From: Haliotis rufescens
Lineage: Eukaryota
Assembly (NCBI RefSeq): GCF_023055435.1
Contig: NW_025963924.1
Location: 5,270,001-5,334,000, forward strand
DNA: 64,000 nucleotides
Reading direction: 5' to 3'
Shown: positions 3,957 to 59,749 of the stretch, one piece after another
Layout: every line of letters begins with the position of its first letter
How positions within the stretch are numbered: the stretch's first letter is position 1
Program-made: the position numbers and the translations under genes
The notes under the pieces: generated by a model
Told to the model about the DNA's origin: nothing
Databases searched by the model: none
What the model saw: the letters and a program-made list of their open reading frames with translations, nothing else

Positions 3957-4513
3957 ATATAGTATCTCCCGCGTCCCTCCTCAGAGAATGGATGTTTAGT
4001 TTTCATCTTAATTTTTCCACATCCTACAAGATGTAGTGTTTTTAATGATATATGACCGGATATCGCTGTCAAGCCCTACAGGACTTACAGATCGCGGAAC
4101 ACCAAGGGTCAAATACTTCCACCATAAAATTAAACACGCAAAATCGGCAACCATCTTGCAAGAATTGCGACTTTTAGTATCTCCCGCCCCGCCCCCCCCC
4201 CCCCCCCCCCCCCCCCCCTCGCAGACGGGATATCTATCTATGGATGTAATTTTGTCATATACTTGAGGATATAATCTTTTTAATGATATATAGCACGACA
4301 TCATCGACCAAATCGTACATCAGTTATAAATAGCTGAACATATAGGTTTCAGACACTTGAAAATTGACTGATATAGTCGGCAACTGTAAAGAATTGAGAC
4401 TTTTAGTATCTCCCGACCCCAGATACTTGCACACGTGAAATTTGACTGAAAAAATGTGACTGTGTGGGGCAACCATCAAGAATGCTACTCTGAGTATCTC
4501 ATGCAGTATCTCA

Positions 4514-4681
4514 GAGGCAGTCGGGTAGCCTAGTGGTTAAAGCCTTCGCTCGTCATGCTGAAGACCCGGGTTCGATTCTCGACATGGGTACAATGTGTGA
4601 GGCCAATTTCTGGTGTTCCCCGCCGTGATATTGCGGGAATACTGCTAAAAGCGGCGTAAAACCCTACTCACTCACTCACTC
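4514..4681 (+). mobile_element. tRNA-derived SINE, family D, upstream of each gene copy
   Basis: tagcctagtggttaaagc...gggttcgattc head and (actc)n tail; other copies at ~10249, 15963, 21651, 27373, 33104, 38807, 44465, 50187, 55970. Confidence 0.85.
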
Positions 4682-4802
4682 ATGTACACCAGCCAGCTCG
4701 CAGTCGGGATATTGATCTATCTTCGTAAATTCCCCACATTCTACCAGACGACAAAATTTACCCTAGTCGAGCTCAGCCTGCGATGACGGACTTTACCGAG
4801 AT

Positions 4803-4862
4803 GTGACGGAATCGCCTCTGTGACGTCATAATGGCAACGCCGCCATTGCTTGCGTAGCAACC
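4803..4862 (+). promoter_or_regulatory. Candidate proximal promoter: CRE (TGACGTCA 4821-4828) overlapping an X-box/RFX-like element, plus YY1-like CGCCATT; present in all ten units
   Basis: Perfect palindromic CRE ~100 bp upstream of the ATG, half-CRE tgacg at 4804, gtcataatggcaac 4825-4838, tagcaac half-site; further gttgctagg and cgccatttt at 5054-5072 in intron 1. Confidence 0.5.
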
Positions 4863-4925
4863 AGATTTACATTTGGTCAAGTCTGATAGCTCTGCCAAAA
4901 TTGTCTTTTTCCTTTTTTTACAAGC

Positions 4926-6867
4926 ATGAATGAGATTCACCTTCCAGATTTCCATCATCTTCAGAACGAGGGGGAACTGTAAGTAGATTTTTTTAATTCT
5001 TATATTGTACGTAGCGTGATGGAATCTCCAAATTAAATGTAACGGACGTTCTCGTTGCTAGGTCGCCATTTTGGACCCTGATTTCAAAGGGTATACCGAA
5101 GTGCATATGCCAATTTCAGCGATCCCTCAAACAAAATTGCCCCATGCCGTTCCCGTTTTCAGACAGTATTAAGTATATTGGAAATCGCCGACAATATCAT
5201 AGTGTGGCACGAGGTCATATAATACATTTTCGCCCCAAAACATGCCAATCCTGAGGACCACAATTCGCGCTACTTTAGGCTAAATTTCCCCTGTCTTTTG
5301 CCAGTTTACAAAGAGTTGTTACTGTCTGTTTACAGCATCAACCCTTCTCGTTTCTGGTTTGAACTAATCACTTCCCGGATCGACATCAATCATTCGTACG
5401 CCGAGAGGCTGCTCAGCTGGTGTGAAGATTGTAAAGGCAAGCTTGACACTGTCAGTCAAGACGGTAAGCATGCGATTACTTATTTAGATTAACCCTTTGA
5501 CTTTAAAGTTCCTGTAATGTTGCTTTTAGCTATCATTTTGGTCTATTATCGACTTTGTTGAATGTCTGCATCGCGTTTTGGCTAATACTTTTGCGTTTTT
5601 GGTTTTTAGCATGTTCCGAGAGTTATGAGATTCGTCATCTTCTGGACTGCTACCTGAAATCGTCCGAACAGGAGGCTAACCATATTCTCACCGTGTCACG
5701 TGATCTTACCGGCCAGAACGGATCCATCCGATCTCTAAAAAAGTGAGAAAACTTATTGCATCTGTCGATGGTACTCCCGTGTGACTTCTGACTGTCTCGT
5801 TTTGAGTGAATGATTTATAAAATGGACAGTAAGGTATTCATGGTTGTTGGTGGTTATGTTTTCAGACTGACGTCTACTAACAGGAGAGGCGTGTCATCTG
5901 AGCACAAGGACCTGAGCCGGGAACTTCTGTCCCTGACTGAGAGACACATGGTGTGCCTCAAACATCTCCAGGACGTGAAGGAGGTAAGTTGTTGTGGCGA
6001 CTGCCTTCAGGATGAAGCGTTAATCATAATTTGTTTTGTATTCTCAATGCCATACACATAATCGTATGTTCATCAAAGTAGAATACAACAAGTTGGATGT
6101 TTTCTCCTTCTTGGCAGAACGGAATAATGGCCATGACTGCCTCTCACAATTATGAACGGAGAATAAGCGAGTTGAAGGCTGAGCTGGAGAAGGTGGGGGA
6201 GAAGTCTAAGAGATCCCGGCCCAGCATGGTAGAGAAGAAAGTTCGGACTCTGGAGTCCAAGCTGTTTAAATACGACCAGAAGAAGAGGACCCACAGAATC
6301 CATTACGAACGGCTATTGAAGGAGGAGAGTGAGCTTGTGAACAAGCTGAGAAAGGTGTGCATTTGAAAATAGGGGAGCTTACTTCTGTGTCTCCTGCCAT
6401 TCCTACCCATTCTTGTGTTTGGTTCCTCTGTGTTAGAACTCTTTATCTTAATCTTGATTAACCTTCTTTCTCTATTTAAGTTAACTCTTCCCCTTACCGA
6501 CACAAACAAACCCAAAACTACACAATGACATGCAAAACACAAATATCCGCTCTTGTTCATGTCTGTCTTTCGATATCTTGCCCTCATCTGTTTTCGTGCA
6601 TGTTTCTGTCATTCTCCTGTTACTTTTTGTTTTTCCTTCTGTCATTTCTCTATCAATTCCCTGTTTTGTTTGTCCCCTCTCTCCGCCCACCCAGACCTCT
6701 GACCATGCATGTCAAGAAGCATGTGCCCTGCAGAAGAGTCAGTTGGAGTCCTTGGTCTCCAGTCTCAGAGACTTTGTTGTCAAGACGTGCTCGTCTGACA
6801 ACGCTGACAGGTACAGCAGTAGCATTGGCTTAACTGTGTCACGGTGTATTGTTCTGAAGTTCTGATG

Positions 6868-6918
<51 letters not shown>

Positions 6919-8031
6919 GTTTATAAGAGAGCTACAATCGTCGCATCAGTGTGTTATACGCAGTTTTATCCTTTCTGATTATATTTTAAGTTAATCTTAA
7001 GGTCAGCTGTATTCCCTTTGCATAGCTTTGTTAGCTATCCTCTGTTTTGTTTGAAAAATGATAGGATTTTCTGTTGCTGCAGGACCAACTTCCTAAAGTC
7101 AGCTATAGATGACATAGCTGTCGATGACATTGTCAATGCCACCTGTGATGTGACCTCACGGAAATATGTCTTCCCGGATGTTCAGGGTTGGCATCAGAAA
7201 TTTGGCTTCTTGGAGAAAATTCCAACCTCGTTTATCCGAGCATCTGATGTGGTCATTAGACGAGATCTGAAGAAAGGCCTGACTGAGGAGAACTGCCTGG
7301 CACAAGAAGTCATGTCAGCCATGGGCCAGCCAGTTCACAGGCGCAGATGCTGGATCTCGAAGTCTAGGACCAAGAATGGTGACGACGGTGACATCAATAA
7401 CAATGAGACTGTTGCTGGTAAATAGAGCCTTACGTTATATCCCTCTCTGTGATAATGCTTTGTGTTGCCCGAAACTGTGGCTTGTGCAAACAATGTGGTA
7501 GAGTTCAATTAATAGGATGTATTGGAAGATGTAGACCTTCATCAAATGCCCGTGTCGTTCTTCAGCTGCAGTGGAGGACGACATTAAATACATGGAGGAC
7601 GTTTATGTGCGAGTTGTCCGCCCCTTCAAGCCCACCCACCCTGAGCACCTCCAGCTGAATCTAGGTGAGTGTTCCCACCCAGCAGTGCCTGCAACACTCA
7701 TGGGTCGGATGTAGGAGCGCCTATAGTTGCACATGGATGACCTTGCATGGATGCTGCATGTGTGAGGTTAAGCCTAAGTGGTCCTACTCTTTATGAGCAG
7801 AAGTAGAGCGAATGATTACTGGAAAAATGTTGATGATATTTGTATTTTTTTATACTTGTGTGGTTCTCTTGGGTTATGGTGTTACTTTTGTTTCTTGCAG
7901 GCATGCGCATCAAGCAAAAGTTCCCAATGGATGTGAGGGGCATGTCCTTTGGGTGGTGCCGGAGTGGGCTTGTCGGCCGTAACAAACAGTATGGCTTCTA
8001 CCCTGCTGACCACGTGATTCTGGAGACATAG
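4926..8031 (+). CDS. Divergent PACSIN/syndapin-like F-BAR + SH3 protein, copy 1 (9 coding exons, 449 aa)
   Basis: Exons 4926-4978, 5336-5463, 5610-5742, 5866-5983, 6118-6354, 6695-6810, 7083-7417, 7566-7664, 7901-8031; all GT-AG, phases join into 1350 nt with no internal stop. ELITSRIDINHSYAERLLSW resembles the FCH motif ERARIEKAYAQQLTEW; C-terminal VRVVRPF...HLQLNLG...GFYPADHV resembles the PACSIN SH3 (GLYPANYV). Exon 1 is the least certain exon. Confidence 0.85.
6870..6918. repeat. (CT)n microsatellite in intron 6, length differs between copies
   Basis: Directly visible; short in copy 6 (~35450), long in copy 9 (~52545). Confidence 0.95.
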
Positions 8032-10652: not shown

Positions 10653-12597
10653 ATGAATGAGATTCACCTTCCAGATTTCCATCATCTTCAGAACGAGGGG
10701 GAACTGTAAGTAGATTTTTTTAATTCTTATATTGCACGTAGCGTGATGGAATCTCCAAATTAAATGTAACGGACGTTCTCGTTGCTAGGTCGCCATTTTG
10801 GACCCTGATTTCAAAGGGTATACCGAAGTGCATATGCCAATTTCAGCGATCCCTCAAACAAAATTGCCCCATGCCGTTCCCGTTTTCAGACAGTATTAAG
10901 TATATTGGAAATCGCCGACAATATCATAGTGTGGCACGAGGTCATATAATACATTTTCGCCCCAAAACATGCCAATCCTGAGGACCACAATTCGCGCTAC
11001 TTTAGGCTAAATTTCCCCTGTCTTTTGCCAGTTTACAAAGAGTTGTTACTGTCTGTTTACAGCATCAACCCTTCTCGTTTCTGGTTTGAACTAATCACTT
11101 CCCGGATCGACATCAATCATTCGTACGCCGAGAGGCTGCTCAGCTGGTGTGAAGATTGTAAAGGCAAGCTTGACACTGTCAGTCAAGACGGTAAGCATGC
11201 GATTACTTATTCAGATTAACCCTTTGACTTTAAAGTTCCTGTAATGTTGCTTTTAGCTATCATTTTGGTCTGTTATCGACTTTGTTGAATGTCTGCATCG
11301 CGTTTTGGCTAATACTTTTGCGTTTTTGGTTTTTAGCATGTTCCGAGAGTTATGAGATTCGTCATCTTCTGGACTGCTACCTGAAATCGTCCGAACAGGA
11401 GGCTAACCATATTCTCACCGTGTCTCGTGATCTTACCGGCCAGAACGGATCCATCCGATCTCTAAAAAAGTGAGAAAACTTATTGCATCTGTCGATGGTA
11501 CTCCTGTGTGACTTCTGACTGTCTCGTTTTGAGTGAATGATTTATAAAATGGACAGTAGGGTATTCATGTTGTTGGTGGTTATGTTTTCAGACTGACGTC
11601 TACTAACAGGAGAGGCGTGTCATCTGAGCACAAGGACCTGAGCCGGGAACTTCTGTCCCTGACTGAGAGACACATGGTGTGCCTCAAACATCTCCAGGAC
11701 GTGAAGGAGGTAAGTTGTTGTGGCGACTGCCTTCAGGATGAAGCGTTAATCATAATATGTTTTGTATTCTCAATGCCATATACATAATCGTATGTTCATC
11801 AAAGTAGAATACAACAAGTTGGATGTTTTCTCCTTGGCAGAACGGAATAATGGCCATGACTGCCTCTCACAATTATGAACGGAGAATAAGCGAGTTGAAG
11901 GCTGAGCTGGAGAAGGTGGGGGAGAAGTCTAAGAGATCCCGGCCCAGCATGGTAGAGAAGAAGGTTCGCACTCTGCACTCTAAGCTGTTTAAATACGACC
12001 AGAAGAAGAGGACCCACAGAATCCATTACGAGCAGCTATTGAAAGAGGAGAGTGAGCTTGTGAACAAGCTGAGAAAGGTGTGCATTTGAAAATAGGGGAG
12101 CTTACTTCTGTGTCTCCTGCCATTCCTACCCATTCTTGTGTTTGGTTCCTCTGTGTTAGAACTCTTTATCTTAATCTTGATTAACCTTCTTTCTCTATTT
12201 AAGTTAACTCTTCCCCTTACCGACACAAACAAACCCAAAACTACACAATGACATGCAAAACACAAATATCCGCTCTTGTTCATGTCTGTCTTTCGATATC
12301 TTGCCCTCATCTGTTTTCGTGCATGTTTCTGTCATTCTCCTGTTACTTTTTGTTTTTCCTTCTGTCATTTCTCTATCAATTCCCTGTTTTGTTTGTCCCC
12401 TCTCCCCGCCCACCCAGACCTCTGACCATGCATGTCAAGAAGCATGTGCCCTGCAGAAGAGTCAGTTGGAGTCCTTGGTCTCCAGTCTCAGAGACTTTGT
12501 TGTCAAGACGTGCTCGTCTGACAACGCTGACAGGTACAGCAGTAGCATTGGCTTAACTGTGTCACGGTGTATTGTTCTGAAGTTCTGATGCTCTCTC

Positions 12598-12634
<37 letters not shown>

Positions 12635-13744
12635 TATAAGAGAGCTACAATCGTTGCATCAGTGTGTTATACGCAGTTTTATCCTTTCTGATTATATTTT
12701 AAGTTAATCTTAAGGTCAGCTGTATTCCCTTTGCATAGCTTTGTTAGCTAGCCTCTGTTTTGTTTGAAAAATGATAGGATTTTCTGTTGCTGCAGGACCA
12801 ACTTCCTAAAGTCAGCTATAGACGACATAGCTGTCGATGACATTGTCAATGCCACCTGTGATGTGACCTCACGGAAATATATCTTCCCGGATGTTCAGGG
12901 TTGGCATCAGAAATTTGGCTTCTTGGAGAAAATTCCAACCTCGTTTATCCGAGCATCTGATGTGGTCATTAGACGAGATCTGAAGAAAGGCCTGACTGAG
13001 GAGAACTGCCTGGCACAAGAAGTCATGTCAGCCATGGGCCAGCCAGTTCACAGGCGCAGATGCTGGATCTCTAAGTCTAGGACCAAGAATGGTGACGACG
13101 GTGACATCAATAACAATGAGACTGTTGCTGGTAAATAGAGCCTTACGTTATATCCCTCTCTGTGATAATGCTTTGTGTTGCCCGAAACTGTGGCTTGTGC
13201 AAACAATGTGGTAGAGTTGAATTAATAGGATGTATTGGAAGATGTAGACCTTCATCAAATGCCCGTGTCTTTCTTCAGCTGCAGTGGAGGACGACATTAA
13301 ATACATGGAGGACGTTTATGTGCGAGTTGTCCGCCCCTTCAAGCCCACCCACCCTGAGCACCTCCAGCTGAATCTAGGTGAGTGTTCCCACCCAGCAGTG
13401 CCTGCAACACTCATGGGTCGGATGTAGGAGCGCCCATAGTTGCACATGGATGACCTTGCATGGATGCTGCATGTGTGAGGTTAAGCCTAAGTGGTCCTAC
13501 TCTTTGTGAGCAGAAGTAGAGCGAATGATTACTGGAAAAATGTGGATGATATTTGTATTTTTTTATACTTGTGTGGTTCTCTTGGGTTATGGTGTTACTT
13601 TTGTTTCTTGCAGGCATGCGCATCAAGCAAAAGTTCCCAATGGATGTGAGGGGCATGTCCTTTGGGTGGTGCCGGAGTGGGCTTGTCGGCCGTAACAAAC
13701 AGTATGGCTTCTACCCTGCTGACCACGTGATTCTGGAGACATAG
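10653..13744 (+). CDS. PACSIN-like F-BAR + SH3 gene, copy 2 (lineage B, apparently intact)
   Basis: Same nine exons and splice sites as copy 1; VRTLHSK/YEQLL/YIFP variants; 3-nt intronic deletion before exon 5. Confidence 0.83.
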
Positions 13745-16366
13745 ACTATTTGTTTCCTCTGCTTTAAACCATAATCCATCTTGACTGTATATATTGTAAA
13801 AATGTTTTCATGTAAATACATATTGATAACTGTGTACACATTTTGTCGGCTTCGTTATTTTGTTCCTTCCTTGGGTCTGACATAGACGAGGAGGCAACAT
13901 CAGAACTGTAGAGGCAGGCTGAGAATATCCATCTTGGATGATGAGTGGGCCTCAGAGCACAGTTACCTCCCACCCCACTGAGGTTTACCATGAACCGGAA
14001 GGAAATTAAGATAATATAGTGCCTTGTTTAAATGGGCTGATCAGTCCGTGCCAATGTTTTTAGTGTGACTTGGGATAGCTTAAATGTAAGATTAGACATT
14101 GTTGTTTGTCGCAAATCTTTCGTTAGCCACAGCCTTTGCAAGGGTATTGATTCCAGCTTCCCATGACTTGACCCCAAGTTGAAAACCACTATGTGTGTTT
14201 CGGCTCGAAATATCCGGTGAACATTGTTGACAGTTGTTACTGCCAAATTTGACTGGAGTAGCCAGGCCGATACGTTGCGTTATAAGTGACAAGTGACAGG
14301 TCGGTCAGCATGCAACAGGAGAACAGCCCACAACCGATATTAATTAGGGTGGGCTGTTATGTCATTGTAGATAGCAAAGAAGGAAAATAATTGTGGTCTG
14401 AGGCCAGTGTTCTACTTCATTTGATCTTGGGGGTCATAGGTGAAAACACAGGGAAGCGGTCGTAAAATGCACGTGGCCGTGGGGGTCGGGTGGACAGCAT
14501 TAGGCCGAGTCGAGCAGGTCGGGTGGGTTGATGTACCTTTTAAGTTGTTCCCCTCAACAGTGAAGGTGGGGAGGTGGGCTGTAGCGGGGGGTAGCTGGGT
14601 CCACTTGCGTCACCCCTGAGTGCAGGGAGGGACAGACGCAGTAGTTCAGAAGAGCAGTGATGGGGCACATCTTCCTCGATCAAGGGACTATTTCAGTAGC
14701 AGACGGTACGAGGCTCGCCGGCCACGTCGACCCTGGACATGCCTATAGAGATATTAAATCAGAACGTGTCGTCTTTACATTGGTTTCTGATTCAATAAGG
14801 ATGACGAATTATTGTAATAAAGAACAATCGAGAAAACATTACTGTGTCGAAATTGCAAATCCAAAACCATCTTGAAATGGGACTTTTAATATGTCCCGCC
14901 TCTCTCACAGAAAGGATATTTGGGTATTCACATATAGTTTACCTAATTACTTAGACGCTGTTGCTGTTATTTTGATATATTTTTCAATTCTGTAAAGAGT
15001 TCCGAGAGTATTACCAAGCGTTGCACAAATGTATGCAGGATCGGCTACATTCGGAAACAATCAACATTTGCGGCTTTTAGTATCTCCCGTGTCCCTCCTT
15101 ACAGAATGGATGTTTGGTTTTCAGCTTAATTTTTTCACATACTGCAAGGTATAGCGCATTTATTGATATATGACGGGATATCACTGAAAATATCTTACAT
15201 GACTTATAAAATCGCGGAACATTAAATGTCATACTTCAGCCATGAAATTGGACTAAAAGTCGGCAACTGTAAAGAATTGCGGCTTTTAGTATATCCCGCG
15301 TCCCTCCTCAGAGAATGGATGTTTAGTTTTCATCTTAATTTTTCCACATCCTACAAGATGTAGTGTTTTTAATGATATATGACCGGATATCGCTGACAAG
15401 CCCTACAGGACTTACAGATCGCGGAACACCAAGGGTCAAAAACTTCCACCATAAAATTTAACACGCAAAATCGGCAACCATCTTGCAAGATGCGACTTTT
15501 AGTATCTCCCGCCCCCCTCCTCGCAGACGGGATATCTATCTATGGTTGTAATTTTGTCATATACTTGAGGATATAATCTTTTTAATGATATATAGCACGA
15601 CATCATCGACAAAATCGTACATCAGTTAAAAATAGCTGAACATATAGGTTTCAGACACTTGAAAATTGACTGATATAGTCGGCAACCATAAAGAATTGAG
15701 ACTTTTAGTATCTCCCGACCCCTTCTCGCAGACGGGATATCTACCCATGATTGTAATTTTGTCATATATTTGAGGACATAATCCTTTTAATGGTACATGT
15801 GTATATAACACAATGTCATCGACAATATCGTACAGTACTAACAAATACGTGAACTTGGGGGGGGGGGGGGGGGGTGGTCCAGATACTTGCACACATGAAA
15901 TTTGACTGAAAAAATGGGCAACCATCAAGAATGCTACTCTGAGTATCTCATGCAGTATCTCAGGGGTAGTGGGATAGCCTAGTGGTTAAAGCCTTCGCTC
16001 GTCACGCTGAAGACCCGGGTTCGATTCTCGACAGGAGTACAATGTGTGAAGCCAATTCCTGGTGTCCCCCGCCGTGATATTGCTGGAATATTGCTAAAAG
16101 CGGTGTAAAACCCTACTCACTCATGCACGCCACCCAGCTCGCAGTCGGGATATTGATCTATCTTCGTTAATTCCCCACATTCTACCAGACGATAAAATTT
16201 ACGCTAGTCGAGCTCAGCCTGCAATGACGGACTTTACCGAGATGTGACGGAATCGCCTCTGTGACGTCATAATGGCAACGCCGCCATTGCTTGCGTAGCA
16301 ACCAGATTTACACTTGGTCAAGTCTGATAGCTCTGCCAAAATTGTCTTTTTCCTTTTTTTACAAGC

Positions 16367-18318
16367 ATGAATGAGATTCACCTTCCAGATTTCCATCATC
16401 TTCAGAACGAGGGGGAACTGTAAGTAGATTTTTTTAATTCTTATATTGCACGTAGCGTGATGGAATCTCCAAATTAAATGTAACGGACGTTCTCGTTGCT
16501 AGGTCGCCATTTTGGACCCTGATTTCAAAGGGTATACCGAAGTGCATATGCCAATTTCAGCGATCCCTCAAACAAAATTGCCCCATGCCGTTCCCGTTTT
16601 CAGACAGTATTAAGTATATTGGAAATCGCCGACAATATCATAGTGTGGCACGAGGTCATATAATACATTTTCGCCCCAAAACATGCCAATCCTGAGGACC
16701 ACAATTCGCGCTACTTTAGGCTAAATTTCCCCTGTCTTTTGCCAGTTTACAAAGAGTTGTTACTGTCTGTTTACAGCATCAACCCTTCTCGTTTCTGGTT
16801 TGAACTATTCACTTCCCGGATCGACATCAATCATTCGTACGCCGAGAGGCTGCTCAGCTGGTGTGAAGATTGTAAAGGCAAGCTTGACACTGTCAGTCAA
16901 GACGGTAAGCATGCGATTACTTATTCAGATTAACCCTTTGACTTTAAAGTTCCTGTAATGTTGCTTTTAGCTATCATTTTGGTCTGTTATCGACTTTGTT
17001 GAATGTCTGCATCGCGTTTTGGCTAATACTTTTGCGTTTTTGGTTTTTAGCATGTTCCGAGAGTTATGAGATTCGTCATCTTCTGGACTGCTACCTGAAA
17101 TCGTCCGAACAGGAGGCTAACCATATTCTCACCGTGTCTCGTGATCTTACCGGCCAGAACGGATCCATCCGATCTCTAAAAAAGTGAGAAAACTTATTGC
17201 ATCTGTCGATGGTACTCCTGTGTGACTTCTGACTGTCTCGTTTTGAGTGAATGATTTATAAAATGGACAGTAGGGTATTCATGTTGTTGGTGGTTATGTT
17301 TTCAGACTGACGTCTACTAACAGGAGAGGCGTGTCATCTGAGCACAAGGACCTGAGCCGGGAACTTCTGTCCCTGACTGAGAGACACATGGTGTGCCTCA
17401 AACATCTCCAGGACGTGAAGGAGGTAAGTTATTGTGGTGACTGCCTTCAGGATGAAGCGTTAATCATAATATGTTTTGTATTCTCAATGCCATACACATA
17501 ATCGTATGTTCATCAAAGTAGAATACAACAAGTTGGATGTTTTCTCCTTCTTGGCAGAACGGAATAATGGCCATGACTGCCTCTCACAATTATGAACGGA
17601 GAATAAGCGAGTTGAAGGCTGAGCTGGAGAAGGTGGGGGAGAAGTCTAAGAGATCCCGGCCCAGCATGGTAGAGAAGAAGGTTCGCACTCTGCACTCTAA
17701 GCTGTTTAAATACGACCAGAAGAAGAGGACCCACAGAATCCATTACGAGCAGCTATTGAAAGAGGAGAGTGAGCTTGTGAACAAGCTGAGAAAGGTGTGC
17801 ATTTGAAAATAGGGGAGCTTACTTCTGTGTCTCCTGCCATTCCTACCCATTCTTGTGTTTGGTTCCTCTGTGTTAGAACTCTTTATCTTAATCTTGATTA
17901 ACCTTCTTTCTCTATTTAAGTTAACTCTTCCCCTTACCGACACAAACAAACCCAAAACTACCCAATGACATGCAAAACACAAATATCCGCTCTTGTTCAT
18001 GTCTGTCTTTCGATATCTTGCCCTCATCTGTTTTCGTGCATGTTTCTGTCATTCTCCTGTTACTTTTTGTTTTTCCTTCTGTCATTTCTCTATCAATTCC
18101 CTGTTTTGTTTGTCCCCTCTCTCCGCCCACCCAGACCTCTGACCATGCATGTCAAGAAGCATGTGCCCTGCAGAAGAGTCAGTTGGAGTCCTTGGTCTCC
18201 AGTCTCAGAGACTTTGTTGTCAAGACGTGCTCGTCTGACAACGCTGACAGGTACAGCAGTAGCATTGGCTTAACTGTGTCACGGTGTATTGTTCTGAAGT
18301 TCTGATGCTCTCTCTCTC

Positions 18319-18365
<47 letters not shown>

Positions 18366-19475
18366 TATAAGAGAGCTACAATCGTTGCATCAGTGTGTTA
18401 TACGCAGTTTTATCCTTTCTGATTATATTTTAAGTTAATCTTAAGGTCAGCTGTATTCCCTTTGCATAGCTTTGTTAGCTATCCTCTGTTTTGTTTGAAA
18501 AATGATAGGATTTTCTGTTGCTGCAGGACCAACTTCCTAAAGTCAGCTATAGATGACATAGCTGTCGATGACATTGTCAATGCCACCTGTGATGTGACCT
18601 CACGGAAATATATCTTCCCGGATGTTCAGGGTTGGCATCAGAAATTTGGCTTCTTGGAGAAAATTCCAACCTCGTTTATCCGAGCATCTGATGTGGTCAT
18701 TAGACGAGATCTGAAGAAAGGCCTGACTGAGGAGAACTGCCTGGCACAAGAAGTCATGTCAGCCATGGGCCAGCCAGTTCACAGGCGCAGATGCTGGATC
18801 TCTAAGTCTAGGACCAAGAATGGTGACGACGGTGACATCAATAACAATGAGACTGTTGCTGGTAAATAGAGCCTTACGTTATATCCCTCTATGTGATAAT
18901 GCTTTGTGTTGCCCGAAACTGTGGCTTGTGCAAACAATGTGGTAGAGTTGAATTAATAGGATGTATTGGAAGATGTAGACCTTCATCAAATGCCCGTGTC
19001 TTTCTTCAGCTGCAGTGGAGGACGACATTAAATACATGGAGGACGTTTATGTGCGAGTTGTCCGCCCCTTCAAGCCCACCCACCCTGAGCACCTCCAGCT
19101 GAATCTAGGTGAGTGTTCCCACCCAGCAGTGCCTGCAACACTCATGGGTCGGATGTAGGAGCGCCCATAGTTGCACATGGATGACCTTGCATGGATGCTG
19201 CATGTGTGAGGTTAAGCCTAAGTGGTCCTACTCTTTGTGAGCAGAAGTAGAGCGAATGATTACTGGAAAAATGTGGATGATATTTGTATTTTTTTATACT
19301 TGTGTGGTTCTCTTGGGTTATGGTGTTACTTTTGTTTCTTGCAGGCATGCGCATCAAGCAAAAGTTCCCAATGGATGTGAGGGGCATGTCCTTTGGGTGG
19401 TGCCGGAGTGGGCTTGTCGGCCGTAACAAACAGTATGGCTTCTACCCTGCTGACCACGTGATTCTGGAGACATAG
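16367..19475 (+). CDS. PACSIN-like F-BAR + SH3 gene, copy 3 (lineage B, apparently intact)
   Basis: Same exon structure; private ELFTS variant in exon 2. Confidence 0.83.
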
Positions 19476-42200: not shown

Positions 42201-42299
42201 GTGAGGGGCATGTCCTTTGGGTGGTGCCGGGGTGGGCTTGTCGGCCGTAACAAACAGTATGGCTTCTACCCTGCTGACCACGTGATTCTGGAGAAATAG
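39211..42299 (+). CDS. PACSIN-like F-BAR + SH3 gene, copy 7 (lineage B, apparently intact)
   Basis: Same exon structure; WCRGG variant shared with copies 8-9 and private ILEK C-terminus. Confidence 0.83.
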
Positions 42300-46818: not shown

Positions 46819-46868
<50 letters not shown>

Positions 46869-48002
46869 TTCTCTCTCGTTTATAAGAGAGCTACAATCGT
46901 CGCATCAGTGTGTTATACGCAGTTTTATCCTTTCTGATTATATTTTAAGTTAATCTTAAGGTCAGCTGTATTCCCTTTGCATAGCTTTGTTAGCTATCCT
47001 CTGTTTTGTTTGAAAAATGATAGGATTTTCTGTTGCTGCAGGACCAACTTCCTAAAGTCAGCTATAGATGACATAGCTGTCGATGACATTGTCAATGCCA
47101 CCTGTGATGTGACCTCACGGAAATATGTCTTCCCGGATGTTCAGGGTTGGCATCAGAAATTTGGCTTCTTGGAGAAAATTCCAACCTCGTTTATCCGAGC
47201 ATCTGATGTGGTCATTAGACGAGATCTGAAGAAAGGCCTGACTGAGGAGAACTGCCTGGCACAAGAAGTCATGTCAGCCATGGGCCAGCCAGTTCACAGG
47301 CGCAGATGCTGGATCTCGAAGTCTAGGACCAAGAATGGTGACGACGGTGACATCAATAACAACGAGACTGTTGCTGGCACCTCCCGTGGTAAATAGAGCC
47401 TTACGTTATATCCCTCTCTGTGATAATGCTTTGTGTTGCCCGAAACTGTGGCTTGTGCAAACAATGTGGTAGAGTTCAATTAATAGGATGTATTGGAAGA
47501 TGTAGACCTTCATCAAATGCCCGTGTCTTTCTTCAGCTGCAGTGGAGGACGACATTAAATACATGGAGGACGTTTATGTGCGAGTTGTCCGCCCCTTCAA
47601 GCCCACCCACCCTGAGCACCTCCAGCTGAATCTAGGTGAGTGTTCCCACCCAGCAGTGCCTGCAACACTCATGGGTCGGATGTAGGAGCGCCCATAGTTG
47701 CACATGGATGACCTTGCATGGATGCTGCATGTGTGAGGTTAAGCCTAAGTGGTCCTACTCTTTGTGAGCAGAAGTAGAGCGAATGATTACTGGAAAAATG
47801 TTGATGATATTTGTATTTTTGTATATGTGTGTGGTTCTCTTGGGTTATGGTGTTACTTTTGTTTCTTGCAGGCATGCGCATCAAGCAAAAGTTCCCAATG
47901 GATGTGAGGGGCATGTCCTTTGGGTGGTGCCGGGGTGGGCTTGTCGGCCGTAACAAACAGTATGGCTTCTACCCTGCTGACCACGTGATTCTGGAGACAT
48001 AG
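44877..48002 (+). CDS. PACSIN-like F-BAR + SH3 gene, copy 8 (lineage A, +GTSR, 453 aa)
   Basis: Same exon structure; VRTLESK/YERLL/YVFP, ERHRV, 12 extra in-frame nt at the end of exon 7. Confidence 0.83.
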
Positions 48003-50598: not shown

Positions 50599-52540
50599 AT
50601 GAATGAGATTCACCTTCCAGATTTCCATCATCTTCAGAACGAGGGGGAACTGTAAGTAGATTTTTTTAATTCTTATATTGTACGTAGCGTGATGGAATCT
50701 CCAAATTAAATGTAACGGACGTTCTCGTTGCTAGGTCGCCATTTTGGACCCTGATTTCAAAGGGTATACCGAAGTGCATATGCCAATTTCAGCGATCCCT
50801 CAAACAAAATTGCCCCATGCCGTTCCCGTTTTCAGACAGTATTAAGTATATTGGAAATCGCCGACAATATCATAGTGTGGCACGAGGTCATATAATACAT
50901 TTTCGCCCCAAAAAATGCCAATCCTGAGGACCACAATTCGCGCTACTTTAGGCTAAATTTCCCCTGTCTTTTGCCAGTTTACAAAGAGTTGTTACTGTCT
51001 GTTTACAGCATCAACCCTTCTCGTTTCTGGTTTGAACTAATCACTTCCCGGATCGACATCAATCATTCGTACGCCGAGAGGCTGCTCAGCTGGTGTGAAG
51101 ATTGTAAAGGCAAGCTTGACACTGTCAGTCAAGACGGTAAGCATGCGATTACTTATTTCGATTAACCCTTTGACTTTAAAGTTCCTGTAATGTTGCTTTT
51201 AGCTATCATTTTGGTCTATTATCGACTTTGTTGAATGTCTGCATCGCGTTTTGGCTAATACTTTTGCGTTTTTGGTTTTTAGCATGTTCCGAGAGTTATG
51301 AGATTCGTCATCTTCTGGACTGCTACCTGAAATCGTCCGAACAGGAGGCTAACCATATTCTCACCGTGTCACGTGATCTTACCGGCCAGAACGGATCCAT
51401 CCGATCTCTAAAAAAGTGAGAAAACTTATTGCATCTGTCGATGGTACTCCCGTGTGACTTCTGACTGTCTCGTTTTGAGTGAATGATTTATAAAATGGAC
51501 AGTAAGGTATTCATGGTTGTTGGTGGTTATGTTTTCAGACTGACGTCTACTAACAGGAGAGGCGTGTCATCTGAGCACAAGGACCTGAGCCGGGAACTTC
51601 TGTCCCTGACTGAGAGACACAGGGTGTGCCTCAAACATCTCCAGGACGTGAAGGAGGTGAGTTGTTGTGGCGACTGCCTTCAGGATGAAGCGTTAATCAT
51701 AATTTGTTTTGTATTCTCAATGCCATACACATAATCGTATGTTCATCAAAGTAAAATACAACAAGTTGGATGTTTTCTCCTTCTTGGCAGAACGGAATAA
51801 TGGCCATGACTGCCTCTCACAATTATGAACGGAGAATAAGCGAGTTGAAGGCTGAGCTGGAGAAGGTGGGGGAGAAGTCTAAGAGATCCCGGCCCAGCAT
51901 GGTAGAGAAGAAAGTTCGGACTCTGGAGTCCAAGCTGTTTAAATACGACCAGAAGAAGAGGACCCACAGAATCCATTACGAACGGCTATTGAAGGAGGAG
52001 AGTGAGCTTGTGAACAAGCTGAGAAAGGTGTGCATTTGAAAATAGGGGAGCTTACTTCTGTGTCTCCTGCCATTCCTACCCATTCTTGTGTTTGGTTCCT
52101 CTGTGTTAGAACTCTTTATCTTAATCTTGATTAACCTTCTTTCTCTATTTAAGTTAACTCTTCCCCTTACCGACACAAACAAACCCAAAACTACACAATG
52201 ACATGCAAAACACAAATATCCGCTCTTGTTCATGTCTGTCTTTCGATATCTTGCCCTCATCTGTTTTCGTGCATGTTTCTGTCATTCTCCTGTTACTTTT
52301 TGTTTTTCCTTCTGTCATTTCTCTATCAATTCCCTGTTTTGTTTGTCCCCTCTCTCCGCCCACCCAGACCTCTGACCATGCATGTCAAGAAGCATGTGCC
52401 CTGCAGAAGAGTCAGTTGGAGTCCTTGGTCTCCAGTCTCAGAGACTTTGTTGTCAAGACGTGCTCGTCTGACAACGCTGACAGGTACAGCAGTAGCATTG
52501 GCTTAACTGTGTCACGGTGTATTGTTCTGAAGTTCTGATG

Positions 52541-52613
<73 letters not shown>

Positions 52614-53738
52614 GTTTATAAGAGAGCTACAATCGTCGCATCAGTGTGTTATACGCAGTTTTATCCTTTCTGATTATATTTTAAGTTAATCTTAAGGTCA
52701 GCTGTATTCCCTTTGCATAGCTTTGTTAGCTATCCTCTGTTTTGTTTGAAAAATGATAGGATTTTCTGTTGCTGCAGGACCAACTTCCTAAAGTCAGCTA
52801 TAGATGACATAGCTGTCGATGACATTGTCAATGCCACCTGTGATGTGACCTCACGGAAATATGTCTTCCCGGATGTTCAGGGTTGGCATCAGAAATTTGG
52901 CTTCTTGGAGAAAATTCCAACCTCGTTTATCCGAGCATCTGATGTGGTCATTAGACGAGATCTGAAGAAAGGCCTGACTGAGGAGAACTGCCTGGCACAA
53001 GAAGTCATGTCAGCCATGGGCCAGCCAGTTCACAGGCGCAGATGCTGGATCTCGAAGTCTAGGACCAAGAATGGTGACGACGGTGACATCAATAACAACG
53101 AGACTGTTGCTGGCACCTCCCGTGGTAAATAGAGCCTTACGTTATATCCCTCTCTGTGATAATGCTTTGTGTTGCCCGAAACTGTGGCTTGTGCAAACAA
53201 TGTGGTAGAGTTCAATTAATAGGATGTATTGGAAGATGTAGACCTTCATCAAATGCCCGTGTCTTTCTTCAGCTGCAGTGGAGGACGACATTAAATACAT
53301 GGAGGACGTTTATGTGCGAGTTGTCCGCCCCTTCAAGCCCACCCACCCTGAGCACCTCCAGCTGAATCTAGGTGAGTGTTCCCACCCAGCAGTGCCTGCA
53401 ACACCCATGGGTCGGATGTAGGAGCGCCCATAGTTGCACATGGATGACCTTGCATGGATGCTGCATGTGTGAGGTTAAGCCTAAGTGGTCCTACTCTTTG
53501 TGAGCAGAAGTAGAGCGAATGATTACTGGAAAAATGTTGATGATATTTGTATTTTTGTATATGTGTGTGGTTCTCTTGGGTTATGGTGTTACTTTTGTTT
53601 CTTGCAGGCATGCGCATCAAGCAAAAGTTCCCAATGGATGTGAGGGGCATGTCCTTTGGGTGGTGCCGGGGTGGGCTTGTCGGCCGTAACAAACACTATG
53701 GCTTCTACCCTGCTGACCACGTGATTCTGGAGACATAG
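50599..53738 (+). CDS. PACSIN-like F-BAR + SH3 gene, copy 9 (lineage A, +GTSR, 453 aa)
   Basis: As copy 8, with private NKHYG variant. Confidence 0.83.
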
Positions 53739-55885: not shown

Positions 55886-56373
55886 CCAGATACTTGCACA
55901 CATGAAATTTGACTGAAAAAATGGGCAACCATCAAGAATGCTACTCTGAGTATCTCATGCAGTATCTCATGGGTAGTGGGATAGCCTAGTGGTTAAAGCC
56001 TTCGCTCGTCACGCTGAAGACCCGGGTTCGATTCTCGACAGGAGTACAATGTGTGAAGCCAATTCCTGGTGTCCCCCGCCGTGATATTGCTGGAATATTG
56101 CTAAAAGCGGTGTAAAACCCTACTCACTCATGCACGCCACCCAGCTCGCAGTCGGGATATTGATCTATCTTCGTTAATTCCCCACATTCTACCAGACGAC
56201 AAAATTTACGCTAGTCGAGCTCAGCCTGCAATGACGGACTTTACCGAGATGTGACGGAATCGCCTCTGTGACGTCATAATGGCAACGCCGCCATTGCTTG
56301 CGTAGCAACCAGATTTACATTTGGTCAAGTCTGATAGCTCTGCCAAAATTGTCTTTTTCCTTTTTTTACAAGC

Positions 56374-58315
56374 ATGAATGAGATTCACCTTCCAGATTTC
56401 CATCATCTTCAGAACGAGGGGGAACTGTAAGTAGATTTTTTTATATTCTTATATTGCACGTAGCGTGATGGAATCTCCAAATTAAATGTAACGGACGTTC
56501 TCGTTGCTAGGTCGCCATTTTGGACCCTGATTTCAAAGGGTATACCGAAGTGCATATGCCAATATCAGCGATCCCTCAAACAAAATTGCCCCATGCCGTT
56601 CCCGTTTTCAGACAGTATTAAGTATATTGGAAATCGCCGACAATATCATAGTGTGGCACGAGGTCATATAATACATTTTCGCCCCAAAACATGCCAATCC
56701 TGAGGACCACAATTCGCGCTACTTTAGGCTAAATTTCCCCTGTCTTTTGCCAGTTTACAAAGAGTTGTTACTGTCTGTTTACAGCATCAACCCTTCTCGT
56801 TTCTGGTTTGAACTAATCACTTCCCGGATCGACATCAATCATTCGTACGCCGAGAGGCTGCTCAGCTGGTGTGAAGATTGTAAAGGCAAGCTTGACACTG
56901 TCAGTCAAGACGGTAAGCATGCGATTACTTATTTAGATTAACCCTTTGACTTTAAAGTTCCTGTATTGTTGCTTTTAGCTATCATTTTGGTCTGTTATCG
57001 ACTTTGTTGAATGTCTGCATCGCGTTTTGGCTAATACTTTTGCGTTTTTGGTTTTTAGCATGTTCCGAGAGTTATGAGATTCGTCATCTTCTGGACTGCT
57101 ACCTGAAATCGTCCGAACAGGAGGCTAACCATATTCTCACCGTGTCACGTGATCTTACCGGCCAGAACGGATCCATCCGATCTCTAAAAAAGTGAGAAAA
57201 CTTATTGCATCTGTCGATGGTACTCCCGTGTGACTTCTGACTGTCTCGTTTTGAGTGAATGATTTATAAAATGGACAGTAGGGTATTCATGGTTGTTGGT
57301 GGTTATGTTTTCAGACTGACGTCTACTAACAGGAGAGGCGTGTCATCTGAGCACAAGGACCTGAGCCGGGAACTTCTGTCCCTGACTGAGAGACACAGGG
57401 TGTGCCTCAAACATCTCCAGGACGTGAAGGAGGTGAGTTGTTGTGGCGACTGCCTTCAGGATGAAGCGTTAATCATAATTTGTTTTGTATTCTCAATGCC
57501 ATACACATAATCGTATGTTCATCAAAGTAGAATACAACAAGTTGGATGTTTTCTCCTTCTTGGCAGAACGGAATAATGGCCATGACTGCCTCTCACAATT
57601 ATGAACGGAGAATAAGCGAGTTGAAGGCTGAGCTGGAGAAGGTGGGAGTGAAGTGTAAGAGATCCCGGCCCAGCATGGTAGAGAAGAAAGTTCGGACTCT
57701 GGAGTCCAAGCTGTTTAAATACGACCAGAAGAAGAGGACCCACAGAATCCATTACGAACGGCTATTGAAGGAGGAGAGTGAGCTTGTGAACAAGCTGAGA
57801 AAGGTGTGCATTTGAAAATAGGGGAGCTTACTTCTGTGTCTCCTGCCATTCCTACCCATTCTTGTGTTTGGTTCCTCTGTGTTAGAACTCTTTATCTTAA
57901 TCTTGATTAACCTTCTTTCTCTTTTTAAGTTAACTCTTCCCCTTACCGACACAAACAAACCCAAAACTACACAATGACATGCAAAACACAAATATCCGCT
58001 CTTGTTCATGTCTGTCTTTCGATATCTTGCCCTCATCTGTTTTCGTGCATGTTTCTGTCATTCTCCTGTTACTTTTTGTTTTTCCTTCTGTCATTTCTCT
58101 ATCAATTCCCTGTTTTGTTTGTCCCCTCTCTCCGCCCACCCAGACCTCTGACCATGCATGTCAAGAAGCATGTGCCCTGCAGAAGAGTCAGTTGGAGTCC
58201 TTGGTCTCCAGTCTCAGAGACTTTGTTGTCAAGACGTGCTCGTCTGACAACGCTGACAGGTACAGCAGTAGCATTGGCTTAACTGTGTCACGGTGTATTG
58301 TTCTGAAGTTCTGAT

Positions 58316-58352
<37 letters not shown>

Positions 58353-59419
58353 TATAAGAGAGCTGCAATCGTCGCATCAGTGTGTTATACGCAGTTCTAT
58401 GCTTTCTGATTATATTTTAAGCTATTCTTAAGGTCAGCTGTATTCCCTTTGCATAGCTTTGTTAGCTATCCTCTGTTTTGTTTGAAAAATGATAGGACGA
58501 CATAGCTGTCGATGACATTGTCAATGCCACCTGTGATGTGACCTCACGGAAATATATCTTCCCGGATGTTCAGGGTTGGCATCAGAAATTTGGCTTCTTG
58601 GAGAAAATTCCAACCTCGTTTATCCGAGCATCTGATGTGGTCATTAGACGAGATCTGAAGAAAGGCCTGACTGAGGAGAACTGCCTGGCACAAGAAGTCA
58701 TGTCAGCCATTGGCCAGCCAGTTCACAGGCGCAGATGCTGGATCTCTAAGTCTAGGACCAAGAATGGTGACGACGGTGACATCAATAACAATGAGACTGT
58801 TGCTGGTAAATAGAGCCTTACGTTATATCCCTCTCTGTGATAATGCTTTGTGTTGCCCGAAACTGTGGCTTGTGCAAACAATGTGGTAGAGTTGAATTAA
58901 TAGGATGTTTTGGAAGATGTAGACCTTCATCAAATGCCCGTGTCTTTCTTCAGCTGCAGTGGAGGACGACATTAAATACATGGAGGACGTTTATGTGCGA
59001 GTTGTCCGCCCCTTCAAGCCCACCCACCCTGAGCACCTCCAGCTGAATCTAGGTGAGTGTTCCCACCCAGCAGTGCCTGCAACACTCATGGGTCGGATGT
59101 AGGAGCGCCCATAGTTGCACATGGATGACCTTGCATGAATGCTGCATGTGTGAGGTTAAGCCTAAGTGGTCCTACTCTTTGTGAGCAGAAGTAGAGCGAA
59201 TGATTACTGGAAAAATGTGGATGATATTTGTATTTTTTTATACTTGTGTGGTTCTCTTGGGTTATGGTGTTACTTTTGTTTCTTGCAGGCATGCGCATCA
59301 AGCAAAAGTTCCCAATGGATGTGAGGGGCATGTCCTTTGGGTGGTGCCGGACTGGGCTTGTCGGCCGTAACAAACAGTATGGCTTCTACCCTGCTGACCA
59401 CGTGATTCTGGAGACATAG
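56374..59419 (+). pseudogene. PACSIN-like gene, copy 10, probably disrupted
   Basis: 43-nt deletion at ~58497 removes the exon-7 acceptor (ctgttgctgcag) and the first codons; the two nearest AGs give immediate stops; extra substitutions VGVKCKR, SAIG, WCRTG. Confidence 0.7.
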
Positions 59420-59749
59420 ACTATTTGTTTCCTCTGCTTTAAACCATAATCCATCTTGACTGTATATATTGTAAAAATGTTTTCATGTAAATACATATTG
59501 ATAACTGTGTACACATTTTGTCGGCTTCGTTATTTTGTTCCTTCCTTGGGTCTGACAAAGACGAGGATGCAACATCAGGACTGGAGAGGCAGGCTGCTGA
59601 GCAGGAACAGTACCATTGAGAGAAACAGATTCTCAGAGTGTGTCTGTACTAGTCTGGATAAATGGTGGTTTAGTGGTGCTCGCTGGTTGAGATATAATGC
59701 CATATTTAAACATACTTAAACACAGTTTACTGACAGGTATACAATGAGA

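What the first reader, a model, noticed from the sequence alone, without database searches (positions are those of the whole stretch)
3960..59596. Ten-copy tandem amplicon of a hidden, strongly diverged F-BAR/SH3 (PACSIN/syndapin-like) gene
Seen: ten ~5.7-kb units, each with nine GT-AG exons that splice to an open 449-453 aa frame (copies 1-9). No long ORF reveals the gene. Knowledge: F-BAR + linker + C-terminal SH3 of ~450 aa is the PACSIN/syndapin layout, and syndapin is usually a conserved single-copy gene in invertebrates. By-eye matches run along the whole protein: RIDINHSYAERLLSW ~ RARIEKAYAQQLTEW; CQEACALQKSQLESL ~ FEQCQQFEEKRLRFF; LKSAIDDIAVDD...FPDVQGW ~ LEQSIRAADAVED...WPQFEEW; GFYPADHV ~ GLYPANYV. 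Inference: a fast-evolving, dosage-amplified membrane-shaping paralogue. This pattern is typical of ampliconic germline or conflict genes and unexpected for an endocytic scaffold family.
Basis: partly seen in the sequence, partly recalled or inferred. Interest (0 to 1): 0.85.

Follow-up and report, generated by a model that had tools for sequence, protein, structure and literature searches.

The report
Amplified abalone syndapin-derived gene array
Red abalone carries ten tandem copies (nine intact) of a gene that arose from the membrane-bending protein syndapin/PACSIN but has diverged so far that standard domain searches miss it; it is real and unusual, though its function and expression were not tested.

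Summary
Window 3960-59596 is a head-to-tail array of ten ~5.7-kb units that differ by 0.1-1.2% in substitutions. Each unit carries a nine-exon GT-AG gene on the + strand. Copies 1-9 are open (449 or 453 aa); copy 10 is broken.

Two corrections:
- The genes are not hidden. Copies 1-9 are letter-identical to RefSeq models of Haliotis rufescens named "uncharacterized protein LOC...".
- The first coding exon conserved across species lies at 10653-10705 in unit 2 and joins an acceptor at 11063. An ATG at 10871 joined to 11032 is also open for 449 aa.

The PACSIN/syndapin reading is largely supported, although Pfam finds no FCH or SH3 domain. The support is:
- five of the eight introns match those of the abalone's genuine syndapin gene (contig C556) in phase and place;
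- pairwise similarity to that syndapin beats all but 3 of 1000 shuffles;
- Foldseek's top hits for two low-confidence models are PACSIN F-BAR domains;
- language-model features point to F-BAR/SH3 families;
- a symmetric homodimer is predicted.

dN/dS is about 0.27, so selection is purifying, not conflict-like. The family was found only in Haliotis, and copies cluster by species.

The parts
3960..59596 (+). Tandem array of ten ~5.7-kb units. The left edge lies inside a 209-bp minisatellite; the right edge is 177 bp after the stop codon of copy 10.
   Evidence: Self-BLAST; whole-genome profile search
4926..8031 (+). Copy 1, ATG to stop, nine exons, 449 aa. Letter-identical to P0017 (LOC124116982).
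10653..13744 (+). Copy 2 (reference model), 449 aa, identical to P0007 (LOC124116992). Exons: 10653-10705, 11063-11190, 11337-11469, 11592-11709, 11841-12077, 12418-12533, 12796-13130, 13279-13377, 13614-13744 (stop included).
16367..19475 (+). Copy 3, 449 aa, identical to P0011 (LOC124116984).
22055..25159 (+). Copy 4, 449 aa, identical to P0015 (LOC125383459).
27777..30879 (+). Copy 5, 449 aa, identical to P0008 (LOC125383473).
33508..36586 (+). Copy 6, 449 aa, identical to P0016 (LOC125383494).
39211..42299 (+). Copy 7, 449 aa, identical to P0004 (LOC124116988).
44877..48002 (+). Copy 8, 453 aa (exon 7 is 12 nt longer), identical to P0014 (LOC125383474).
50599..53738 (+). Copy 9, 453 aa, identical to P0013 (LOC124146595 isoform X1). 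Isoform X2 (P0012, 449 aa) would fit use of the upstream exon-7 donor; this was not verified.
56374..59419 (+). Copy 10, broken. A ~38-bp deletion removes the exon-7 acceptor and the first ~22 nt of exon 7. RefSeq models a 279-aa product (P0009) that reads from exon 6 into intron 6.
15051..15854 (+). Diverged 209-bp minisatellite, about 0.5-1.3 kb upstream of the next copy's ATG. It is present in every unit (TRF calls 49326-49853 and 55061-55522). The array's left end falls inside it.

Best explanation
The array holds nine intact copies and one truncated copy of a Haliotis-restricted gene. The gene arose by DNA-level duplication of a PACSIN/syndapin-type gene (N-terminal F-BAR domain, linker, C-terminal SH3 domain) and then diverged to about 13-16% identity with PACSINs. 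The product is a soluble protein of about 450 aa with no signal peptide or membrane segment. It most likely forms a symmetric antiparallel F-BAR-like homodimer. It has lost the NPF motifs of the syndapin linker, has a conserved middle region instead, and ends in a basic, SH3-like domain whose usual ligand-binding residues are changed. By inference it works as a dimeric membrane or cytoskeleton scaffold with new partners, not as a spare syndapin. The tandem array grew recently by unequal crossing-over, possibly seeded at the 209-bp minisatellite, and raises gene dosage. Copies 2-6 are the youngest. Shown here: the array structure, the open frames, identity to RefSeq models, shared gene structure with syndapin, and purifying selection. 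Inferred: the fold, dimerisation, loss of canonical partners, the dosage effect, and every cellular role.
For: Array and open frames.

The canonical syndapin of this genome lies elsewhere, at C556:43.549-43.590 Mb. One of its exons matches Drosophila Syndapin F-BAR at E 6.8e-20.

Introns, given as residue/phase. Array gene: 17/2, 60/1, 104/2, 144/0, 223/0, 261/2, 373/1, 406/1. Syndapin F-BAR: 69/1, 136/0, 182/0, 224/0, 257/2, 298/0. Four pairs match in phase within 9 residues; random placement does as well in 0.035% of trials.

Three of those junctions have sequence anchors:
- the intron after the R-x-x-I-x-x-x-Y-A-x-x-L-x-x-W motif;
- the phase-0 intron 4-5 residues before a shared C-Q;
- the phase-2 intron that splits an AG|G arginine codon in both genes.

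In both genes the last intron is phase 1 inside the glycine codon that precedes the GWCRG...G-x-[FY]-P-A-x-x-V half of the SH3 domain, and the stop follows 3-4 codons after that motif.

Other support:
- Local alignment of residues 1-300 to the syndapin F-BAR scores 68 against shuffles of 38.6 +/- 6.1; 3 of 1000 shuffles reach it.
- The family HMM's best hit among 754 and among 2583 ORFs at true F-BAR loci is the syndapin FCH exon (E 0.18 and 0.27).
- Foldseek: the top 12 hits (E from 4.5e-3) and the top 24 hits (E from 0.02) for two models are F-BAR domains, mostly or all PACSIN.
- ESM features: PSTPIP1/PACSIN2 clusters at 0.91 with 175 shared features; the C-terminal 78 aa gives SH3 clusters at 0.87.
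- Exon 9 against PDB: 3 of 4 hits are SH3 domains, including PACSIN1 and PACSIN2 (E 1.2-1.5).
- Homodimer of residues 1-300: score 0.60, best control 0.00. That mark was reached by 21 of 30 proteins solved as pairs of one chain and 0 of 23 solved as single chains (microbes). Partner pLDDT is at least 76, and the runs share at least 72% of contacts. The interface is symmetric over residues 20-81 and 243-278.
- dN/dS is 0.26-0.29 against the C101 paralogue.
- Open orthologues exist in H. asinina and H. cracherodii; H. rubra has shorter or partial models (228-460 aa).
Against: - Pfam finds no FCH or SH3 domain in the full-length relative P0001 at E <= 1, nor in exon ORFs at E <= 10.
- The genome-wide FCH scan does not hit the window.
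- Profile-profile comparison to FCH exons gives only P = 0.065.
- Both AlphaFold models are poor (mean pLDDT 45 and 47, C-terminus about 25, no SH3 fold formed). Foldseek TM-scores are 0.2-0.35 and E-values are above 0.001.
- The rigid structural aligner ranks generic long-helix proteins (Z 9-10.7) above F-BAR domains (Z 8.8).
- The dimer pass may reflect the model's memory of solved F-BAR dimers.
- The +/-9-residue tolerance in the intron test was chosen after seeing the data. At +/-4 residues only two pairs match (P = 0.036).
- Shuffling does not preserve helical periodicity.
- There is no expression evidence. Within the array, exons (0.67%) are no more conserved than introns (0.76%), so the array copies themselves give no signal of selection.
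Confidence: 0.75

Rival explanations
1. The family descends from a different F-BAR/SH3 gene (PSTPIP, NOSTRIN, CIP4/TOCA or GAS7) and not from PACSIN/syndapin.
For: The ESM feature search ties PSTPIP1 with PACSIN2 at 0.91 and also lists TOCA, CIP4 and Nostrin. GAS7, Hof1, FCHO2 and PSTPIP1 F-BAR domains appear among the Foldseek and VIA hits. I did not map the introns of the other abalone F-BAR genes (L002, L003, L006, L007).
Against: PACSIN chains fill ranks 1-4 and 1-24 in the two Foldseek runs. The W that ends the Y-A-x-x-L-x-x-W motif and the GWCRG SH3 motif are shared with the abalone syndapin. Five introns match that gene. PACSIN1 and PACSIN2 SH3 domains are among the four PDB hits for exon 9.
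Confidence: 0.1
2. It is a lineage-specific helical protein with no F-BAR ancestry, and the resemblances are convergent or come from learned-model bias toward long helices followed by a small C-terminal domain.
For: No Pfam match. No relatives outside Haliotis among 5.8 and 1.84 billion proteins. Low-confidence models. Generic helical proteins score as well as F-BAR domains in rigid alignment.
Against: Collinear intron phase and position matches, including two split codons shared with syndapin, are hard to reach by convergence. Pairwise similarity is significant against shuffles. The Foldseek hits are specific to PACSIN, not to coiled coils in general.
Confidence: 0.08
3. The ten-copy number is partly an assembly artefact, or the array is a very young, largely functionless expansion that is transcriptionally silent or decaying.
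For: Copies 2-6 differ by only 0.09-0.28%. Exons are no better conserved than introns within the array. Copy 10 is already broken. No read-depth or RNA data could be obtained.
Against: The units carry distinct substitutions and indels and fall into sub-types: copies 1, 8, 9 and 10 against copies 2-7. Nine of ten frames and all their splice sites are intact. H. rubra also has at least six loci on one contig and H. asinina has two. The family as a whole is under purifying selection.
Confidence: 0.12

Closest known systems
PACSIN/syndapin (F-BAR + NPF linker + SH3). The genuine abalone orthologue is at G000:C556:43548969-43590400 (- strand).
   Same: - Overall layout and length: about 300 aa of helices, a linker, then a C-terminal domain of about 60 aa.
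- Five shared intron positions and phases.
- The N-terminal S-x-F-W and R-x-x-I-x-x-x-Y-A-x-x-L-x-x-W motifs, a central C-Q motif, and the SH3 motifs GWCRG and G-x-[FY]-P-A-x-x-V.
- A predicted symmetric dimer.
- PACSIN F-BAR domains as the best Foldseek hits.
   Different: - No Pfam FCH or SH3 match, and only about 13-16% identity.
- About 20 residues missing between the F-W and Y-A motifs.
- About 17 extra residues and an extra intron in the region where syndapin has its wedge loop (K-S-M-M-H-F).
- No NPF motifs. The 301-385 stretch is instead the most constrained part (dN/dS 0.125).
- The SH3-like domain is basic (pI 10.2), with ALYDY replaced by VVRPF and P-A-N-Y-V by P-A-D-H-V.
- Multi-copy and restricted to Haliotis, whereas syndapin is single-copy and conserved.
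PSTPIP1/2 and other F-BAR/SH3 adaptors (NOSTRIN, CIP4/TOCA, GAS7)
   Same: F-BAR followed by a C-terminal SH3 domain. They appear beside PACSIN in the feature and fold searches.
   Different: They rank lower in Foldseek and lack the PACSIN-type SH3 motif GWC[KR]G. Their intron maps were not compared.
Lineage-specific tandem gene amplifications in molluscs (for example expanded IAP genes in oysters, actinoporin-like genes in mussels)
   Same: Recent species-specific tandem expansion, with copies that cluster by species.
   Different: Those families keep recognisable domains and have proposed immune or toxin roles (titles seen, papers not read). Here the parent is an endocytic scaffold and no role is known.

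Membership tests
PACSIN/syndapin | N-terminal FCH/F-BAR domain recognised by profile (Pfam PF00611) | tested here: not met
   No FCH hit for P0001 at E <= 1 or for exon ORFs at E <= 10. The genome-wide PF00611 scan hits seven other loci but not the window.
PACSIN/syndapin | F-BAR fold (elongated helical bundle) | tested here: inconclusive
   The predicted helices (about 21-56, 62-94, 116-173, 179-254, plus short ones) fit the pattern. Foldseek's top hits are PACSIN F-BAR domains over about 290 columns (E 4.5e-3 and 0.02, prob up to 1.0). But the models have pLDDT 45-47 and TM 0.2-0.35. VIA gives Z 8.8 over 211 aa, no better than generic helical proteins.
PACSIN/syndapin | Antiparallel symmetric homodimer of the F-BAR domain | tested here: met
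   This is a prediction only. Score 0.60 against a best control of 0.00. The mark was reached by 21 of 30 proteins solved as pairs of one chain and 0 of 23 solved as single chains (microbes). Partner pLDDT is at least 76 and the runs share at least 72% of contacts. The two-fold axis is at residue 39, with the interface over 20-81 and 243-278. The pass may come from the model's memory of solved F-BAR dimers.
PACSIN/syndapin | C-terminal SH3 domain | tested here: inconclusive
   No Pfam SH3 match and no SH3 fold in the models. In favour: ESM features of residues 372-449 point to SH3 clusters at 0.87 and 0.85; 3 of 4 PDB hits for exon 9 are SH3 domains including PACSIN1 and PACSIN2 (E 1.2-1.5); and the phase-1 intron sits in the same Gly codon as in the syndapin SH3.
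PACSIN/syndapin | NPF motifs in the linker (EHD binding) | tested here: not met
   P0004 has no NPF. The genuine abalone syndapin has two, in separate exons.
PACSIN/syndapin | Descent from a PACSIN gene, shown by shared gene structure | tested here: met
   Four F-BAR introns share phase within 9 residues (P about 3.5e-4 by random placement; tolerance chosen after the fact). The SH3 intron is identical in codon and phase.
PACSIN/syndapin | Hydrophobic wedge loop | tested here: inconclusive
   Syndapin has K-S-M-M-H-F. The corresponding low-confidence stretch of the array protein (about 92-118) is polar and basic and about 17 residues longer. The alignment there is not reliable.
PACSIN/syndapin | Membrane tubulation and binding of dynamin or N-WASP proline-rich ligands | not testable with these tools
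   This needs liposome and pull-down assays.

The most novel reading that the evidence does not exclude
A PACSIN-derived scaffold has been neofunctionalised in abalone. It keeps the F-BAR dimer but has swapped its partner-binding parts. It is amplified repeatedly and independently in different Haliotis species because dosage matters for a lineage-specific process, for example in gametes or in defence. Alternatively it pairs with or competes against canonical syndapin as a modulator.
Probability: 0.15. Interest if true: 0.7.

Novelty: new variant of a known kind. Interest (0 to 1): 0.5.

Why it matters
F-BAR/SH3 adaptors such as syndapin are conserved, usually low-copy parts of the endocytic machinery. 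Here a copy has escaped that constraint. It has diverged beyond profile detection, lost its NPF motifs and changed its SH3 surface, yet it stays under purifying selection and is amplified in tandem in a species-specific way. Public annotation calls all these genes "uncharacterized". Linking them to syndapin gives them a testable biochemical hypothesis: dimerisation, membrane binding and new ligands. It also shows that intron maps can recover homology that sequence profiles miss. Without expression data the biological importance remains open.

Tried and rejected
- Pfam on exon ORFs and on the full-length relative: no FCH or SH3 match.
- Profile search of PDB sequences with the family alignment: only a chance Syncytin-2 hit at E 0.34.
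- phmmer of exon 2 against PDB: one unrelated hit.
- Profile-profile comparison with the FCH exons of five abalone F-BAR genes: correct register but P = 0.065.
- Two AlphaFold runs (4 and 11 sequences): pLDDT 45 and 47, so of little use for rigid comparison. The VIA second look is dominated by generic helical proteins.
- Searches for relatives outside Haliotis: exon 7 against 1.84 billion representatives, P0001 against 5.8 billion proteins and the family profile against 5.8 billion proteins. All returned only Haliotis proteins, one unnamed 97-aa fragment (P0002, source unknown) and one chance hit.
- The diverged copies at C146:1.366-1.369 and 1.391 Mb are fragmentary and no closer to canonical domains.
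- Rfam on one unit: nothing.
- Literature: no paper mentions the LOC identifiers, or Haliotis together with F-BAR.
- Positive-selection or conflict reading: rejected for now, because dN/dS is 0.26-0.29 overall and 0.56 at most in residues 146-225.
Full report
**1. Observation**

Self-BLAST of the first unit against the window finds ten head-to-tail copies between 3960 and 59596, with a period of about 5.7 kb. The window contains no N. A MAFFT alignment of units 1-9 gives substitution distances of 0.09-1.15%. Copies 2-6 are nearly identical (0.09-0.28%), and copies 1, 8 and 9 form a second type. A six-frame search of the whole 1.33-Gb genome with the family profile places all array copies inside this window. 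The left edge (3960) lies within a diverged 209-bp minisatellite that recurs in every unit. The right edge is 177 bp after the stop codon of copy 10.

**2. Gene model**

From open frames and splice-site phases I derived nine GT-AG exons on the + strand that give 449 aa. Mapping them to every unit shows that copies 1-7 are open for 449 aa and copies 8-9 for 453 aa (exon 7 is 12 nt longer). Copy 10 has lost the exon-7 acceptor.

A search with exon 7 by reference returned a 450-aa protein. Further look-ups showed that the genome is Haliotis rufescens and that RefSeq already models these genes as "uncharacterized protein LOC...". RefSeq and the orthologues use a different first coding exon: ATG at 10653 in unit 2, spliced to 11063. 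With that exon, my spliced copies 1-9 are letter-identical to P0017, P0007, P0011, P0015, P0008, P0016, P0004, P0014 and P0013. Copy 10 corresponds to the truncated 279-aa model P0009, which reads into intron 6.

Exons were searched by reference, and full-length work used the identical database proteins. Splicing was done only inside scripts, to check frames and to count substitutions.

**3. Family and evolution**

Relatives were found only in Haliotis:
- a paralogue on contig C101 (P0001, 87% identical);
- fragmentary diverged copies at C146:1.366-1.369 and 1.391 Mb;
- H. cracherodii (453 aa);
- H. asinina (two proteins, 76-78% identical);
- H. rubra (seven models from at least six loci on one 1.5-Mb contig, plus one on another contig).

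No other credible hit appeared among 1.84 billion representatives or 5.8 billion proteins, even with the family profile at E <= 10. One unnamed 97-aa fragment (P0002, 63% identical, source unknown) also matched.

In a maximum-likelihood tree the copies cluster by species. The H. rufescens array is monophyletic relative to H. cracherodii (support 82/89), and C101 branches outside both. The amplification is therefore recent and species-specific, or else homogenised by gene conversion.

dN/dS by the Nei-Gojobori method is 0.26-0.29 between array copies and C101 (dS 0.216). It is lowest in residues 301-385 (0.125) and highest in 146-225 (0.56). Within the array dS averages 0.016, and exons, introns and spacers are equally similar. 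That pattern indicates purifying selection on the family and gives no information from the array copies themselves.

**4. Is it F-BAR/SH3?**

Pfam finds no FCH or SH3 domain in P0001 (E <= 1) or in exon ORFs (E <= 10), and the genome-wide FCH scan misses the window.

- (a) ESM feature search of P0004 gives PSTPIP1 and PACSIN2 clusters at 0.91 with 175 shared features. The last 78 residues give SH3 clusters at 0.87 and 0.85.
- (b) Two AlphaFold models (H. rufescens and H. asinina proteins) are poor (pLDDT 45 and 47) but show the expected series of long helices. Their Foldseek hit lists are headed by F-BAR domains: the first 12 for one model (mostly PACSIN, with GAS7 and Hof1) and the first 24 for the other (all PACSIN1/2/3). 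E starts at 4.5e-3 and 0.02, with about 290 aligned columns, but TM is only 0.2-0.35. A rigid aligner cannot separate F-BAR (Z 8.8, 211 aa) from generic helical proteins.
- (c) A homodimer of residues 1-300 scores 0.60 against a best control of 0.00. That mark was reached by 21 of 30 proteins solved as pairs of one chain and 0 of 23 solved as single chains (microbes). Partner pLDDT is at least 76, and the runs share at least 72% of contacts. The interface is symmetric and antiparallel, centred on residue 39. The pass may reflect the model's memory of F-BAR dimers, which is itself a likeness.
- (d) The family HMM's best hit among 754 ORFs of seven FCH loci, and among 2583 ORFs of the syndapin locus, is the syndapin FCH exon in the expected register (E 0.18 and 0.27). 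hhalign gives P = 0.065.
- (e) Exon 9 against PDB gives four hits, three of them SH3 domains, including PACSIN1 and PACSIN2 (E 1.2-1.5).

**5. Independent test by gene structure**

I located the genuine abalone syndapin on contig C556. Its exon 2 matches Drosophila Syndapin F-BAR at E 6.8e-20. I read its exons from ORFs and splice sites.

Its F-BAR introns fall after codons 69 (phase 1), 136 (0), 182 (0), 224 (0), 257 (2) and 298 (0). The array gene has introns at 17 (2), 60 (1), 104 (2), 144 (0), 223 (0), 261 (2), 373 (1) and 406 (1). Four pairs agree in phase within 9 residues, and random placement achieves this in 0.035% of trials. At +/-4 residues two pairs agree (P = 0.036). The tolerance was chosen after the fact.

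Local sequence anchors support three of these junctions:
- the intron just after the Y-A-x-x-L-x-x-W motif;
- the phase-0 intron 4-5 residues before a shared C-Q;
- the phase-2 intron that splits an AG|G arginine codon in both genes.

In both genes the last intron is phase 1 inside the glycine codon that precedes the second half of the SH3 domain. Both carry the GWCRG motif, and the stop follows 3-4 codons after the final valine. Most SH3 domains in this genome are not split at all, and only a few break near that position.

A direct local alignment of residues 1-300 to the syndapin F-BAR scores 68 against shuffles of 38.6 +/- 6.1; 3 of 1000 shuffles reach it. Shuffling does not keep helical periodicity, so this somewhat overstates the significance.

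**6. Differences from syndapin**

- There are no NPF motifs, whereas syndapin has two.
- About 20 residues are missing between the F-W and Y-A motifs.
- There is a longer, polar stretch with an extra intron where syndapin has its K-S-M-M-H-F wedge loop.
- The middle segment (301-385) is conserved rather than variable.
- The C-terminal domain is basic (pI 10.2) with altered canonical ligand residues.
- There is no signal peptide or membrane segment.

**7. Verdict**

The PACSIN-derived reading is the best explanation (about 0.75). The words "hidden", "conflict gene" and "germline" are not supported or were not testable. The genes are annotated but uncharacterised. No paper was found that mentions the LOC identifiers, or Haliotis together with F-BAR.

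I class it as a new variant of a known kind, of moderate interest.

Noticed in passing
window 15051-15854 (unit 2); TRF calls at 49326-49853 and 55061-55522: A diverged 209-bp minisatellite (about 3-4 copies) sits upstream of every gene copy, and the array's left end (3960) falls inside it. The best genome-wide DNA matches are all within this array (that tool scores only the best candidates). It may have seeded unequal crossing-over.
   Followed up: partly
window 10871-10892 and 11032-11190: An alternative ATG exon spliced to an upstream acceptor of exon 2 also gives an open 449-aa frame, the same length as the RefSeq model. It could be chance or an alternative 5' exon. The N-terminus conserved across species comes from 10653-10705.
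   Followed up: partly
window 47377-47388 and 53113-53124 (end of exon 7 in copies 8 and 9): Copies 8 and 9 carry 12 extra nt (four residues). The C101 paralogue, H. asinina and H. cracherodii share this length, so the 453-aa form looks ancestral and copies 1-7 have a shifted donor. RefSeq isoform X2 of copy 9 is 449 aa, which would fit use of the upstream donor (not verified).
   Followed up: partly
G000:C556:43548969-43590400 (- strand); loci L001, L025-L029: This is the genuine abalone syndapin/PACSIN gene, spanning about 41 kb. It has a canonical FCH exon, a K-S-M-M-H-F wedge loop, two NPF motifs and a split SH3 domain. I used it as the comparator.
   Followed up: yes
L023 (G000:C146:1365000-1374500) and L024 (G000:C146:1386000-1395500): Fragmentary paralogues, 56% identical in exon 7, lie 3.9 Mb upstream on the same contig. 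They include two partial copies in head-to-head orientation and are probably pseudogenes.
   Followed up: partly
L006 (G000:C101:2210737-2210841, - strand): A weak FCH-like exon (E 0.41) carries a PACSIN-like E-R-A-R-V-E-M-N-Y...W-N-R-K-L motif. It may be another diverged F-BAR gene, on the same contig as the C101 paralogue but 9.8 Mb away.
   Followed up: no
window 12590-12640 (intron 6 of copy 2, and equivalents in other copies): A CT-rich microsatellite that reads as a run of S-L repeats in translation.
   Followed up: no
window 60000-64000: GC content drops from about 0.44 to 0.37 just past the array. No convincing ORF was seen in either flank (1-3960 or 59597-64000).
   Followed up: partly
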